From Salisapilia sapeloensis CBS 127946 (lineage: Eukaryota; Protista; Oomycota), in contig JAADVB010000151.1 of the NCBI GenBank assembly GCA_023334545.1, forward strand, positions 1 to 47,037: 47,037 nt of DNA. Direction: 5' to 3'. Below are positions 11,139 to 14,144 of this stretch, piece by piece (within the stretch, counting starts at the first letter, position 1; each line of letters opens with the position of its first letter). The notes beneath the pieces were generated by a model, which saw only the letters and a program-made list of their open reading frames with translations, made no database searches and was not told where the DNA came from. The position numbers and the translations under genes are program-made.

Positions 11139-11154
11139 TCACTTCTTCATTTGC
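11139..11154 (+). promoter_or_regulatory. Oomycete-type INR+FPR core promoter
   Basis: TCACTTC-TT-CATTTGC matches YCAYTYY-NN-MWTTTNC exactly and ends 30 nt upstream of the ATG at 11185. Confidence 0.65.
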
Positions 11155-11184: not shown

Positions 11185-13167
11185 ATGGTCTTTTCGACTT
11201 CATGCCGACGTGCTGCAGCACTACTTTGTGCATCTCTCTTTATCGGAGTACCGCTGATACGCGCGCATAATTGGATCGATTGTTTCGATCATGACCGTAA
11301 TGTGGTATATGACGACAGTGATGTTTGGGTTCTGGGTGGAAATAAAGGACATGGAGCATGTGAAGGCTACGGCTACAACTATCCTGGACGTGGAGACCCG
11401 GATATTAACACCAAGTACACCTACCTCATTTCCAGGGAAGATGTTATAAATGACGTACCAATTTGCCAGTACACATCTTCTGATGTAGATTACTCTGGAT
11501 GGAGGACTGTGCTTAATGCACAGCCCGGTGATAAGATCTACTATGCATATTTGCCAAACGGACACGTTGTAAAAGACAAAAGTGGACTTGACACAAGACA
11601 AGGTATCTACTGGTCCGGCAAATCAGACGTCCAGCTTATTTCCTACAGCGACATTGTAGACGGCAACCTTGTCGATGGAAGCTTAGCTCCATACGATGAC
11701 GGAAACTGTGGAGAGACATACGAAGATGGTGACTTTAATGGCGGTATGATCCCATCCGGACGTGCTGGTGATTATAAGCCTTGTGTTGGCACTTTTGTCA
11801 TACCAGAGAATACTGCATCCGGAACTTATCCTATGGTTTGGTGGTGGGATATGTTTACTTATGATGACGAAGAGAACATTATATCTGGAGCAGCATTCTC
11901 AACTTGCTTCGATGTTGTCATTACAGATGCGGGCAATGATCCTGCTACGCCGACTTCACCGAGTACAGATGGAAATGAGCCTCCGTCGAATCTAATCCAA
12001 AATCCTACTCCATCTCCGGGATCAACCACTCCCTCTCCGACTATATCGAGCCCTCCATCCGCAAGCGGAGACAACCCCACCAGTCCTCCACCGTCGGATG
12101 TCTCTTTCACTCCTATCACCACTCCAACCCAGGCTCCCGTCCCATCAGACCCACCAGCTCCGCCATCGACTTCACCTCCTCCAGCACCGACATCAGCACT
12201 GCTGCCTGCTCCCATTGTCTCAGACGAACCACTAGGTGCTGTGCGATACACTAGTGTGGGTGGTACCGGATCATACGGGCTAGTCACTACCATCGAATGT
12301 GTCCCTGAAGATGAATGCATTCAGGCTGATTACCCTGTCCAAGGTCCTCTTGTGCCGTTTGATGAAGACTTGACGTTAGCACTACGCGGACCGATGGATG
12401 TCGAGGAGATCTCTGTCTTTACTTTAGGCGAAAATGAATGGAACAGAGCTTCGTACTACTCCAGTCAGCAGGGCCAAGGTACACTTGAAAACATGGTGTT
12501 CTTAAACAACCGAGGCAACGATGCTATAAGCGGTACCTTCACAACATGCCACGGCAACAGCCAGTCGTTCGCAACTGCCGATGGACAAACAGCAGCATTT
12601 CAACCTACCGTATTTGACGGCTACCTTGATGATGGTGTTGAAGTCAATGTCATGTCGAATACACCATGCAATGAACAATGTGGTGCGTCTCGTGGTGTAG
12701 CCTATGAAGGGTGGGCTGGCGCTTACAAGATTTTCATGATAAAGTCGAGAATGCCATTTGGGCAAGGAGGAATTGATATGCCTGCTATATGGCTCTTAAA
12801 TGGTCAAGTAGTCCGAACGGCACAGTACAGTTGCAACTGTCGTGGCGTTGGAACGGATGGACGTTGGCAAGGGGGTTGTGGAGAAGTAGACATCGCTGAG
12901 ATCCTTTCTTCCGGTGGGACCGAGCTTACATCCACCGTGTTTTCATTCCAAGGTGCACGAGGCACCGAGAATTTTACAACTCGGCCAGTCGATTCTAGCT
13001 CCATCTACATCGCTCTCTTCCATGGAGATAGTGGCGACGATCGTGGCACGATCACCATTCTCAGCTACGACGAATCTGCACTCGATCTTTCCGTCGCTCC
13101 ATCTCCAGACCAAGTCCAGGAATGGCTAGACTACGCCAATGCGCAAGTTTTGGACTTTGAGAATTAA
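11185..13167 (+). CDS. Secreted two-domain protein: N-terminal His1 LPMO-like (DUF7492-like) domain, P/S/T linker, TOS1-like (DUF2403 + GH16-like) domain
   Basis: Intronless 660 aa with signal peptide ...PLIRA|HNW. N-terminal domain motifs: A.PG...NGHV, YDDGNCGE, YPMVWWWD, FSTCFDV. Linker is about residues 250-345. TOS1-like motifs: YTSVGGTGSY..VT, GPLVPFDEDLTLALRGP, DMPAIWLLN.QV.RT.QY, GCGEVDIAE. Confidence 0.85.
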   Translation: MVFSTSCRRAAALLCASLFIGVPLIRAHNWIDCFDHDRNVVYDDSDVWVLGGNKGHGACEGYGYNYPGRGDPDINTKYTYLISREDVINDVPICQYTSSDVDYSGWRTVLNAQPGDKIYYAYLPNGHVVKDKSGLDTRQGIYWSGKSDVQLISYSDIVDGNLVDGSLAPYDDGNCGETYEDGDFNGGMIPSGRAGDYKPCVGTFVIPENTASGTYPMVWWWDMFTYDDEENIISGAAFSTCFDVVITDAGNDPATPTSPSTDGNEPPSNLIQNPTPSPGSTTPSPTISSPPSASGDNPTSPPPSDVSFTPITTPTQAPVPSDPPAPPSTSPPPAPTSALLPAPIVSDEPLGAVRYTSVGGTGSYGLVTTIECVPEDECIQADYPVQGPLVPFDEDLTLALRGPMDVEEISVFTLGENEWNRASYYSSQQGQGTLENMVFLNNRGNDAISGTFTTCHGNSQSFATADGQTAAFQPTVFDGYLDDGVEVNVMSNTPCNEQCGASRGVAYEGWAGAYKIFMIKSRMPFGQGGIDMPAIWLLNGQVVRTAQYSCNCRGVGTDGRWQGGCGEVDIAEILSSGGTELTSTVFSFQGARGTENFTTRPVDSSSIYIALFHGDSGDDRGTITILSYDESALDLSVAPSPDQVQEWLDYANAQVLDFEN

Positions 13168-13350: not shown

Positions 13351-14144
13351 ATGCTAGCAAAGGTAGCTCGGCAGCAACAACAGTGCTCGAGTCTGTTGCG
13401 CACAGCCAGCTTGCGTACAACTACTCGGATGGGTTCCGTCCGTCAAACGATGTCGTGGTCTCCAGTGAACATGACCACGATACCAGCCTTTGTTCCAACC
13501 ACAGGCTGGCGATCGGTTGGCACCATCCGTAAGCGGTATGTCACGCCACTTCCATTTACTCGCAAAGTCCGATTTGGAACGACTACGACGACCAAATCGG
13601 GTTCTACGAATCATGCTGCGAAAGAAACGAGCGAGCAAGCGAGTCGACGTGAAATGATGGTGGAGAAATCCAAGCCGCACATGTCTCGTTTGAAGGAGAT
13701 GTGGCGCAAATATGGCTTAGTAGCTATCGGCACGTACGTTACGATGTATGGTATCGTTCTTGGCTCGATCTATCTCGCCATGGACCTCGGTCTGGTGCAG
13801 AAAGCGAAACCAGTTTTGAAACGATTTAACACACAAGGCCATGTCGTGGAAGACAAAGACAGAGAGGCCAATGAAGACGACTTTAGTGTCGTCTCGTACA
13901 CGAACAAGTACGTTGTATGTACCATGTAAAGATATATTTGTCTAAAGTCGCGTATAGATGGATTGAAATCGCGGAAAAGTATGGCATCGCAGACTACATG
14001 GACGTTCATAAAGTGAACTCCAAGACGGGCACGTTCCTATTAGCGTGGGTGGCCACGAAGTTCACGGAGCCGCTACGTCTGGCTTTGACTGTTGCCATCA
14101 CTCCTCGAGTTGCTCGACTAGTTGGTCGTGTGCCGAAACATTAA
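13351..14144 (+). CDS. FAM210/DUF1279-family mitochondrial membrane protein (about 247 aa)
   Basis: Arg/Ser/Thr-rich transit-peptide-like N-terminus. LKEMWRKYGLVAIGTY and GTFLLAWVATKFTEPLRLALTVAITPRVAR are DUF1279 signatures. A 50-bp intron at 13908-13957 joins the two ORFs in frame. Confidence 0.85.

What the first reader, a model, noticed from the sequence alone, without database searches (positions are those of the whole stretch)
11185..13167. Secreted fusion of a His1 LPMO-like domain with a TOS1/GH16-like hydrolase: a candidate oxidative-plus-hydrolytic cell-wall enzyme
Seen: predicted signal cleavage exposes His28 as residue 1 (codon 11266). A second His lies in NAQPGDKIYYAYLPNGH (His127). 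The domain ends with IP...GTYPMVWWW and AAFSTCFDVVI. A Pro/Ser/Thr linker of about 100 aa precedes a TOS1-like domain with EVDIAE (12883-12900). Established: LPMOs (AA9-11, AA13-17) and X325 bind copper through a His1 brace, with a PG..H strand motif and a late aromatic (F/Y)-x-x-C-x-D; GH16 enzymes use ExDxxE; catalytic domain-linker-domain is standard CAZyme architecture. Inference: a previously undescribed copper-protein family fused to a beta-glucan hydrolase/transglycosylase, acting on own or host wall glucan. Caveat: the second-shell Glu/Gln expected before the aromatic is missing (GAAF), so it could be a non-catalytic copper binder.
Basis: partly seen in the sequence, partly recalled or inferred. 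Interest (0 to 1): 0.85.

Follow-up and report, generated by a model that had tools for sequence, protein, structure and literature searches.

The report
LPMO-like domain fused to Tos1 glucanase
An oomycete gene encodes a secreted protein that joins a likely copper "histidine-brace" oxidase domain from an uncharacterised family (DUF7492, distantly related to AA11 LPMOs) to a Tos1-type beta-1,3-glucanase domain. This natural pairing hints at what the uncharacterised family acts on.

Summary
ORF 11185-13167 (+) encodes 660 aa in this order:
- a signal peptide, with predicted cleavage before His28;
- a DUF7492 domain;
- a 96-aa linker that is 64% Pro/Ser/Thr;
- Tos1_N plus Tos1_C domains with an invariant ExDxxE motif.

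**N domain.** The AlphaFold2 model (pLDDT 86.6) matches only LPMO structures. The top 50 have Z 8.5-10.9, and model residue 1 starts each alignment, opposite the first residue of the LPMO chains. A profile of the wider family hits three AA11 structures at E about 2e-5. That alignment puts the conserved aromatic residue (Phe238 here) on the tyrosine of AA11's 'EMY' motif, which I recall as the axial copper-site Tyr140. His28 and His127 are invariant across oomycete, chytrid and zoopagomycete members. One homologue has lost both together.

**C domain.** It is a clear Tos1 family member. Its best structural matches are GH16 endo-beta-1,3-glucanases.

**Distribution.** The fusion is not unique to this window. 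It forms one clade with Pythium oligandrum and Albugo laibachii proteins. Phytophthora carries the DUF7492 domain alone.

**What is open.** "Previously undescribed" is only partly right: the family is in Pfam, and some members carry automatic LPMO names. I found no paper on it, no biochemistry and no described LPMO-Tos1 fusion. Copper binding, catalysis and substrate remain untested. The second-sphere Glu is absent from its AA11 position.

The parts
11185..13167 (+). Complete intron-less coding sequence, 660 codons plus stop, of the secreted two-domain protein
   Evidence: ORF list. Collinear alignments with homologues.
11185..11265 (+). Signal peptide, residues 1-27, with predicted cleavage IRA|H
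   Evidence: Sequence pattern. The cleavage position is conserved in close and distant homologues. No predictor was run.
11266..11268 (+). His28 codon: first residue of the predicted mature protein and candidate first ligand of the histidine brace
   Evidence: Invariant in alignment A4. Model residue 1 starts every alignment to an LPMO chain, opposite that chain's first residue.
11266..11928 (+). LPMO-fold domain of the DUF7492 family, residues 28-248, with six Cys
   Evidence: Pfam. AF2 model pLDDT 86.6. Fold matches are all LPMOs. Profile hits to AA11 structures.
11563..11565 (+). His127 codon in the N-G-H motif: candidate second ligand of the histidine brace
   Evidence: Invariant. Lost together with His28 in homologue P0046.
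11896..11898 (+). Phe238 codon: candidate axial aromatic residue. It is Tyr in all 27 other close homologues that cover this position.
   Evidence: The profile alignment puts this column on the Tyr of 'EMY' in AA11 chain 4mah_A. Counts.
11929..12216 (+). Pro/Ser/Thr-rich linker, residues 249-344, 64% P+S+T
   Evidence: Composition. Homologues have non-alignable low-complexity sequence here.
12238..12423 (+). Tos1_N domain (PF10290), residues 352-413
   Evidence: Pfam E 6e-13.
12436..13122 (+). Tos1_C domain (PF10287), residues 418-646, GH16-like beta-jelly roll
   Evidence: Pfam E 7.7e-55. AF2 model pLDDT 87.4. Best structural matches are GH16 glucanases.
12883..12900 (+). EVDIAE, residues 567-572: ExDxxE catalytic motif of GH16-type enzymes
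   Evidence: E, D and E are invariant in 30 sequences. The motif aligns to CGEIDILE of GH16 laminarinase 4bq1.

Best explanation
The gene encodes a secreted enzyme with two catalytic modules for beta-glucan walls.

1. After signal-peptide removal, His28 becomes the free N-terminus of an LPMO-fold domain. The domain belongs to the DUF7492 family, a separate family whose nearest characterised relatives are the AA11 LPMOs.
2. His28 (amino group and side chain) and His127 would hold one copper ion in a histidine brace, with Phe238 below it.
3. Once reduced, the copper would use O2 or H2O2 to oxidise and nick a polysaccharide chain at a surface.
4. A flexible, probably O-glycosylated Pro/Ser/Thr linker tethers a Tos1-type domain. 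This is a GH16-like, circularly permuted beta-1,3-glucanase or transglycosylase with Glu567, Asp569 and Glu572. It would hydrolyse or re-join the glucan chains exposed nearby.
5. The likeliest substrate is the beta-1,3/1,6-glucan-cellulose wall of the oomycete itself, or of a neighbour or prey. The likeliest role is wall remodelling.

Shown here: the architecture, both folds, conservation of the candidate ligands and of the catalytic motif, homology to AA11 and Tos1, and a single origin of the fusion.

Inferred: copper binding, oxidative catalysis, the substrate, cooperation between the two modules, and the biological role.
For: Architecture.

N domain:
- The AF2 model has pLDDT 86.6 and pTM 0.86.
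- All seven Foldseek PDB hits at E<=0.001 are LPMOs, and so are nearly all of the top 50.
- The VIA-align top 50 are all LPMOs or fusolins, Z 8.5-10.9, about 140-155 aligned residues. Each alignment starts at model residue 1, opposite the first residue of the LPMO chain.
- The family profile A4 hits AA11 structures 7p3u, 4mah and 9exj at E 1.8e-5 to 4.7e-5, and AA9 structures more weakly. The IPxGxxPGxYxLxWxW hairpin aligns, and the family aromatic falls on the Tyr of AA11's 'EMY'.
- H1 and H100 (mature numbering) are two of only five invariant columns across oomycete, chytrid and zoopagomycete members.
- Twenty-one of the 23 members inspected, most of them distant, show a signal peptide followed directly by H-S/T-W.
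- P0046 lost both histidines together, Q and N.
- The language-model neighbours are DUF7492, LPMO, LPMO_10, BIM1-like and AA14 clusters.

C domain:
- Pfam Tos1_C E 7.7e-55.
- ExDxxE is invariant.
- The profile aligns this motif to the catalytic motif of GH16 laminarinase 4bq1, E 0.019.
- The best of 48,161 representative chains is the GH16 endo-1,3-beta-glucanase 3dgt, Z 8.4, and most of the top 25 are GH16.

Fusion: it forms one clade in both domain trees.

Precedents:
- Oomycete OPEL and I06 proteins join a different glucan-related domain (thaumatin-like) to Tos1 through a linker (PMC7219551).
- LPMOs take part in the remodelling of an organism's own wall (PMC10166503, PMC9040799).
Against: - There is no biochemical evidence for any DUF7492 protein.
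- The second-sphere Glu/Gln that sits two residues before the axial Tyr in AA11 is Ala in the whole oomycete clade. LPMO-fold copper binders without LPMO activity exist (X325/Bim1).
- The brace geometry could not be measured, because model coordinates are not exposed.
- Similarity to AA11 covers only the C-terminal third of the domain.
- Some relatives dropped or degraded the N domain: Globisporangium P0193 lacks it, and P0195 and P0046 have lost brace residues. So it is dispensable for whatever Tos1 does.
- Tos1 activity is itself only predicted. A truncated, cell-free-made Pythium insidiosum Tos1-domain protein showed no activity on laminarin or Avicel (PMC7219551).
- Structural Z scores for GH16 (7-8.4) lie in the range the tool calls middling.
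- Transcription evidence is thin: one 178-nt contig at depth 3.8 in an RNA run.
Confidence: 0.6

Rival explanations
1. The N domain keeps the LPMO fold and perhaps copper binding, but it is not an oxidative enzyme. It would serve as a wall-targeting or copper-handling module, like X325/Bim1 or a carbohydrate-binding module. Its job would be to place the Tos1 glucanase on the wall.
For: - The oomycete clade lacks Glu/Gln at the AA11 second-sphere position.
- A BIM1-like cluster appears among the language-model neighbours.
- The N domain decayed or was lost in P0046, P0195 and P0193 while Tos1 stayed intact.
- In the parallel OPEL architecture, a thaumatin-like domain of no shown activity sits at the front (PMC7219551).
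Against: - Both histidines and the aromatic residue are conserved from chytrids to oomycetes. This fits an active site better than a binding face.
- The best structural and sequence matches are catalytic LPMOs (AA15, AA9, AA10, AA11), not X325.
- No C-terminal GPI-type hydrophobic tail is present; the protein ends ...VLDFEN.
- Second-sphere residues come from different loops in different LPMO families (established knowledge for AA10).
Confidence: 0.25
2. The protein acts mainly as an attack enzyme or as an elicitor on a foreign wall (plant, fungal or oomycete prey), as proposed for OPEL. It would not act on the producer's own wall.
For: - Tos1-domain OPEL of Phytophthora parasitica triggers plant defence, and the P. 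insidiosum homologue is secreted and immunoreactive (PMC7219551).
- An orthologue exists in the mycoparasite Pythium oligandrum.
- AA17 LPMOs of Phytophthora are infection factors (cited in PMC8615602).
Against: - The fusion is kept in lineages with very different lifestyles: the obligate biotroph Albugo, the mycoparasite P. oligandrum, and this organism. That fits a housekeeping wall role better.
- Yeast Tos1 proteins are components of the cell's own wall (PMC11657238).
- The thaumatin-like domain that defines OPEL is absent.
Confidence: 0.1
3. The match is a gene-model or assembly artefact: two neighbouring genes read as one.
For: Only a 178-nt RNA contig covers the gene. Merged models do exist among the homologues, for example the PPR fusions P0044 and P0048, and P0194.
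Against: - A single uninterrupted 1,983-nt frame, with no stop, runs between the domains.
- The same architecture occurs in at least ten independent proteins from different sources.
- The RNA contig (11903-12080) spans the boundary between domain and linker.
- A DNA contig of 45 kb is identical over the stretch.
Confidence: 0.02

Closest known systems
AA11 lytic polysaccharide monooxygenases (Aspergillus oryzae AoAA11, PDB 4MAH/4MAI; A. fumigatus AfAA11B, 9EXJ; 7P3U)
   Same: - LPMO beta-sandwich fold, Z 8.7-9.2.
- The only characterised family reached by sequence, profile E about 2e-5.
- Shared IPxGxxPGxYxLxWxW hairpin and aromatic-x-x-C motif.
- Histidine directly after the signal peptide.
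   Different: - Similarity is limited to the last third of the domain.
- Different N-terminal motif (H-S/T-W-I/L-D-C) and N-G-H around the second histidine.
- About 40 extra residues in the middle.
- No Glu two residues before the aromatic in the oomycete clade.
- AA11 enzymes are fungal and act on chitin. The substrate here is unknown, and oomycete walls contain little chitin (established knowledge).
Pfam DUF7492 (PF24320), uncharacterised eukaryotic domain
   Same: The N domain scores above the curated cutoff. The nearest language-model clusters are DUF7492.
   Different: Most catalogued members are stand-alone ascomycete proteins. Here the domain is fused to Tos1. No function is recorded for the family.
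Tos1 / YJL171C cell-wall proteins of yeasts (predicted circularly permuted GH16-like beta-1,3-glucanase; Steczkiewicz et al. 2010, as cited in PMC4176579 and PMC7219551)
   Same: Tos1_N plus Tos1_C domains, an invariant ExDxxE motif, and secretion.
   Different: Yeast proteins have no LPMO-like domain in front. Only 35-40% identity to fungal members.
OPEL / I06 elicitor proteins of Phytophthora parasitica and Pythium insidiosum
   Same: Oomycete secreted proteins with an N-terminal glucan-related domain, a low-complexity linker and a C-terminal Tos1 domain with ExDxxE (PMC7219551).
   Different: Their N domain is thaumatin-like (GH64-TLP) and the linker is Gly-rich. Here the N domain is LPMO-like and the linker is Pro/Ser/Thr-rich.
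Modular bacterial LPMO-hydrolase proteins, such as the AA10-CBM5-GH18 chitinase whose LPMO domain is PDB 5AA7 (Jonesia denitrificans, from my own knowledge)
   Same: One polypeptide with an N-terminal LPMO and a C-terminal glycoside hydrolase for the same wall polymer. 5AA7 is among the fold and profile matches.
   Different: Bacterial, AA10 and GH18, chitin. Here eukaryotic, DUF7492 and Tos1, probably beta-glucan.
AA17 pectin-active LPMOs of Phytophthora, and X325/Bim1 copper-binding LPMO-like proteins
   Same: AA17 is an oomycete LPMO family with Ser/Pro/Thr-rich tails (PMC8615602). X325 has an LPMO fold with a histidine brace but no LPMO activity.
   Different: No AA17 or X325 structure appears among the sequence matches or in the top 50 fold matches.

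Membership tests
LPMO superfamily (histidine-brace copper enzymes, AA9-11 and AA13-17) | Histidine as the first residue of the mature protein, directly after the signal peptide | tested here: met
   IRA|H28. The same junction is found in 28 of 29 close homologues and 21 of 23 inspected members, most of them distant. Cleavage is predicted from the pattern only.
LPMO superfamily (histidine-brace copper enzymes, AA9-11 and AA13-17) | Second conserved histidine completing the brace | tested here: met
   His127 in N-G-H is invariant in A4. It was lost together with His1 in P0046.
LPMO superfamily (histidine-brace copper enzymes, AA9-11 and AA13-17) | Conserved axial Tyr/Phe on a late beta-strand | tested here: met
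   Phe238 here, Tyr in the other close homologues, and Y, F or W in distant ones. It aligns to the Tyr of 'EMY' in AA11 4mah_A.
LPMO superfamily (histidine-brace copper enzymes, AA9-11 and AA13-17) | Immunoglobulin-like beta-sandwich fold with the N-terminus at the active face | tested here: met
   The top 50 VIA matches are all LPMOs or fusolins, Z 8.5-10.9, and every alignment starts at model residue 1, opposite the first residue of the chain. Foldseek E about 2e-4.
LPMO superfamily (histidine-brace copper enzymes, AA9-11 and AA13-17) | Brace geometry in three dimensions (the two histidines within metal-sharing distance) | not testable with these tools
   Model coordinates are not exposed.
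LPMO superfamily (histidine-brace copper enzymes, AA9-11 and AA13-17) | Second-sphere Glu/Gln near the copper | tested here: inconclusive
   Absent at the AA11 position (G-A-A-F) in the oomycete clade, but present as E or D in many distant members. It could come from another loop, as in AA10.
LPMO superfamily (histidine-brace copper enzymes, AA9-11 and AA13-17) | Copper binding and oxidative cleavage of a polysaccharide | not testable with these tools
   This needs the protein. No publication on the family was found.
CAZy family AA11 | Clear sequence similarity over the whole catalytic domain | tested here: not met
   The single protein gives no PDB hit at E<=10. The family profile reaches AA11 only over about 45-70 C-terminal positions at E about 2e-5.
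Pfam DUF7492 (PF24320) | Score above the curated gathering threshold | tested here: met
   46.4 bits against a cutoff of 27, residues 60-252.
Tos1 / YJL171C family (PF10290 + PF10287) | Both Tos1 domains above threshold and in order | tested here: met
   49.4 and 186.4 bits against a cutoff of 27.
Tos1 / YJL171C family (PF10290 + PF10287) | Conserved GGCGExDxxE catalytic motif | tested here: met
   GGCGEVDIAE. G, G, C, G, E, D and E are invariant in 30 sequences.
Glycoside hydrolase family GH16 | ExDxxE on a concanavalin-like beta-jelly roll | tested here: met
   The motif aligns to the catalytic motif of 4bq1. The best of 48,161 chains is GH16 3dgt, Z 8.4.
Glycoside hydrolase family GH16 | Canonical strand order and family-level sequence similarity | tested here: inconclusive
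   The profile E is only 0.019. Foldseek finds nothing significant. Alignments cover residues 71-316 only, and an engineered circular permutant (1ajo) aligns over a different range. This fits the published circular-permutation proposal.
OPEL elicitor family | Thaumatin-like domain plus Gly-rich region before Tos1 | tested here: not met
   No thaumatin or GH64-TLP match. Architecture as defined in PMC7219551.
AA17 and X325 | Sequence or closest-fold match to a member | tested here: not met
   No such chain appears among the sequence hits or the top 50 fold hits.

The most novel reading that the evidence does not exclude
DUF7492 is a new, catalytically active LPMO family whose natural substrate is beta-1,3(/1,6)-glucan, a polymer for which I know of no LPMO. 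The Tos1 fusion would then be a self-contained oxidative-plus-hydrolytic machine for remodelling or breaching glucan walls in oomycetes.
Probability: 0.25. Interest if true: 0.85.

Novelty: new variant of a known kind. Interest (0 to 1): 0.6.

Why it matters
Each new LPMO family so far has brought a new substrate or a new biological role. Examples are starch, xylan, pectin and copper import.

DUF7492 is a small eukaryotic family: 242 clusters at E<=0.001 among 1.84 billion representatives. It carries all the sequence hallmarks of an LPMO, yet I found no paper on it.

Substrate is usually the hardest thing to guess for a new LPMO family. Here nature gives a hint. In one oomycete clade the domain is tethered to a beta-1,3-glucanase-type module.

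This turns "what does DUF7492 do?" into a direct experiment on glucan and cellulose walls. It would also give the first biochemical test of an oomycete Tos1 domain in its full-length context.

Oomycete wall enzymes interest people who work on crop and animal diseases. No such role is shown here.

Tried and rejected
- **Single-sequence and oomycete-only searches of PDB sequences.** They gave nothing or only a marginal AA11 hit. Only the broader family profile reached significance.
- **Foldseek on the C domain.** It returned spurious coronavirus spike and lectin hits, all above E 0.02. VIA-align was needed.
- **AA17, X325 and OPEL membership.** All were considered and rejected (see the membership table).
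- **AA15.** It was the top structural hit (5msz, Z 10.9), but it has no sequence support, so I read it as shared fold only.
- **AA18.** Checked in the literature. Its source reference (Santos et al. 2025) is, as I recall it, an unrelated bacterial enzyme.
- **'LPMO14' of Voshol et al. 2017 (PMC5320794).** Considered. As I recall, it corresponds to what became AA16, which is LPMO_10-like, and no such Pfam match is present here.
- **Pythium oligandrum CAZyme paper supplements.** A search for 'AA11' rows found nothing.
- **Paralogues in the window.** None found.
- **Literature searches.** Searches for DUF7492 and for Tos1 together with LPMO returned no papers. No direct enzymology of Tos1 was found.
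Full report
**1. Observation**

The window holds a single uninterrupted ORF at 11185..13167 on the + strand, 660 aa.
- The His28 codon lies at 11266-11268, after ...GVPLIRA.
- His127 closes NAQPGDKIYYAYLPNGH.
- IPENTASGTYPMVWWW and GAAFSTCFDVVI are there.
- A 96-residue stretch (249-344) is 64% Pro+Ser+Thr.
- EVDIAE lies at 12883-12900.

Pfam finds three domains above their curated cutoffs: DUF7492 (60-252), Tos1_N (352-413) and Tos1_C (418-646, E 7.7e-55). NCBIfam finds nothing, which is expected for a eukaryote.

**2. Organism and relatives**

The closest proteins (52-55% identity in the N domain) have the same three-domain architecture. They include Pythium oligandrum and Albugo laibachii entries. 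Phytophthora, Plasmopara, Bremia, Peronospora and Lagenidium carry the DUF7492 domain alone, followed by a low-complexity tail. The window is therefore from an oomycete or a close relative. Its own protein is not in the searched collection.

In a tree of N domains the ten fusion proteins form one clade (SH-aLRT 82), sister to the stand-alone oomycete proteins.

In a tree of Tos1 domains the fusion proteins form a well-supported clade (96). That clade also holds three proteins for which Pfam reports no DUF7492 domain:
- P0193 (Globisporangium ultimum) has only a signal peptide and a linker before Tos1.
- P0195 carries a degraded N domain.
- P0194 looks like a merged gene model.

So the fusion arose once and the N domain was later lost or degraded in a few lineages.

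**3. The N domain is an LPMO-fold domain with the LPMO active-site pattern**

*Structure.* An AlphaFold2 model of residues 28-248, built on 27 homologues, has mean pLDDT 86.6 and pTM 0.86.
- All seven Foldseek PDB hits at E<=0.001 are LPMOs, and so are nearly all of the top 50: AA10, AA9, AA16 and AA11.
- VIA-align gives Z 8.5-10.9 for the top 50. All are LPMOs or viral fusolins (AA15, AA9, AA10, AA11).
- Each of those alignments starts at model residue 1, opposite the first residue of the LPMO chain.
- In AlphaFold DB the nearest named clusters are 'DUF7492', 'Chitin-binding type-4 domain' and 'AA9 family LPMO'.
- Language-model neighbours tell the same story.

*Sequence.* The oomycete-only profile barely touches AA11 (E 0.08). 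An exhaustive profile search of 1.84 billion representatives found a small family: 242 clusters at E<=0.001. It includes a chytrid (Rhizophlyctis rosea) and a zoopagomycete (Conidiobolus coronatus) protein. The Conidiobolus protein, P0156, itself passes the Pfam AA9 threshold.

A 23-sequence alignment across this range has only five invariant columns: H1, W3, C67, H100 and P180 in mature numbering. Its profile hits three AA11 crystal structures at E 1.8e-5 to 4.7e-5 and several AA9 structures weakly.

In that alignment the family's aromatic-x-x-C motif falls on 'Y-M-N-C' of AoAA11. By my count in the printed alignment this Tyr is residue 140 of chain 4mah_A. From my recollection of the AA11 literature, that is the axial tyrosine of the copper site.

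*Correlated loss.* Among 29 close homologues, 28 have both histidines. The one exception, P0046, has lost both (Gln and Asn). That is the expected pattern if the two residues work as one unit.

*Signal peptide.* The junction with the signal peptide is conserved ([A/G/S]|H-S/T-W) in 21 of the 23 members I inspected, most of them distant.

*Limits.*
- I could not measure the geometry of the putative brace.
- The Glu that sits two residues before the axial Tyr in AA11 is Ala throughout the oomycete clade. Many distant members do have Glu or Asp there.
- The window's protein is the only close homologue with Phe instead of Tyr at the axial position. Both residues occur in active LPMOs (established knowledge).

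**4. The C domain is a Tos1-family, GH16-like module**

- The GGCGExDxxE motif is invariant in 30 sequences.
- The profile's best PDB hit is a GH16 laminarinase, E 0.019, with the motif aligned to the enzyme's catalytic CGEIDILE. The E-to-S mutant of the same enzyme scores lower.
- The AF2 model has pLDDT 87.4 and pTM 0.90.
- Foldseek fails on it.
- VIA-align finds GH16 endo-beta-1,3-glucanases on top, both within Foldseek's list and in an independent pass over 48,161 representative chains: 3dgt at Z 8.4, with most of the top 25 being GH16.
- The Z values are modest and cover residues 71-316. An engineered circularly permuted glucanase (1ajo) aligns over a different range. Both facts fit the published prediction that Tos1 is a circularly permuted beta-1,3-glucanase (Steczkiewicz et al. 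2010, cited in PMC4176579 and PMC7219551).
- I found no direct enzymology of any Tos1 protein. A truncated, cell-free-made P. insidiosum Tos1-domain protein was inactive on laminarin and Avicel (PMC7219551).

**5. Mechanism proposed**

The domain order is the only one a histidine brace allows, because the LPMO domain must own the free N-terminus. The Pro/Ser/Thr linker is the usual flexible, glycosylated tether of modular carbohydrate-active enzymes.

I propose that the copper domain oxidatively nicks an ordered beta-glucan surface, either beta-1,3/1,6-glucan or cellulose. These are the two main polymers of oomycete walls (established knowledge). The tethered Tos1 module would then hydrolyse or transglycosylate the loosened chains.

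Three facts favour action on the organism's own wall over attack on a host:
- The fusion is conserved in lineages with opposite lifestyles (Albugo, P. oligandrum, this organism).
- Yeast Tos1 proteins reside in the cell's own wall (PMC11657238).
- LPMOs are known to act in own-wall remodelling (PMC10166503, PMC9040799).

This point is inference. A parallel oomycete architecture, thaumatin-like domain plus linker plus Tos1 (OPEL/I06, PMC7219551), shows that Tos1 has more than once been given an N-terminal glucan-related partner.

**6. Rivals**

- A non-catalytic, copper-binding or targeting role for the N domain is the serious alternative (0.25). It rests on the missing second-sphere Glu and on the repeated decay of the domain.
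- A role against a host or prey wall, or as an elicitor, is possible (0.1).
- A gene-model artefact is very unlikely. The frame is continuous, the architecture recurs in at least ten proteins, and an RNA contig crosses the domain-linker boundary.

**7. Novelty**

The family is catalogued (Pfam DUF7492) and some members carry automatic LPMO-type names. The fusion proteins of Pythium and Albugo sit in UniProt under the name 'glucan endo-1,3-beta-D-glucosidase'. So the sequences are not new.

I found no paper that mentions DUF7492, or Tos1 together with LPMO, and no biochemical work. LPMO-hydrolase fusions are known in bacteria (an AA10-GH18 chitinase, PDB 5AA7).

I therefore class this as a new variant of a known kind: a candidate new LPMO family, nearest to AA11, in a natural fusion that suggests its substrate.

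**8. Expression**

Evidence is weak. In the one RNA run from the same organism, only a 178-nt contig (11903-12080, depth 3.8) lies on the gene. The next gene downstream is covered at depth 321.

Noticed in passing
P0046 (homologue, 728 aa; no window coordinates): This fusion-clade protein has Gln in place of the N-terminal His and Asn in place of the second His, while keeping the aromatic residue and an intact Tos1 ExDxxE motif. It looks like a natural 'brace-dead' variant.
   Followed up: partly
P0195 and P0193 (homologues; no window coordinates): P0195 carries a degraded DUF7492 domain that Pfam does not report: the N-G-H motif is replaced and there are internal deletions. P0193 (Globisporangium ultimum) has only a signal peptide and linker before Tos1. 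The N domain was therefore lost secondarily within the fusion clade.
   Followed up: partly
P0093, P0098, P0107, P0114, P0144, P0145 and others: These very long proteins (1,500-3,400 aa) match only profile positions of about 145-210, the IPxGxxPGxYxxxWxW hairpin region, in 6-16 repeated stretches. They may carry an unrelated repeat with a similar strand motif, or an array of partial domains.
   Followed up: no
P0188, P0043, P0052: Other DUF7492 architectures exist: DUF7492 plus CBM96 (P0188), DUF7492 plus an NHL repeat in Lagenidium giganteum (P0043), and a 352-aa protein with two DUF7492 stretches (P0052). Fusions with PPR repeats (P0044, P0048) look like merged gene models.
   Followed up: no
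window 13386-13600 and beyond: The gene just downstream is covered by an 847-nt contig at depth 321 in the RNA run. The fusion gene is barely covered in the same run.
   Followed up: no
window 11139-11154: Another first-stage note (s1-283016) places an oomycete-type INR/FPR core promoter about 30-45 nt upstream of the ATG of this gene. I did not test it.
   Followed up: no
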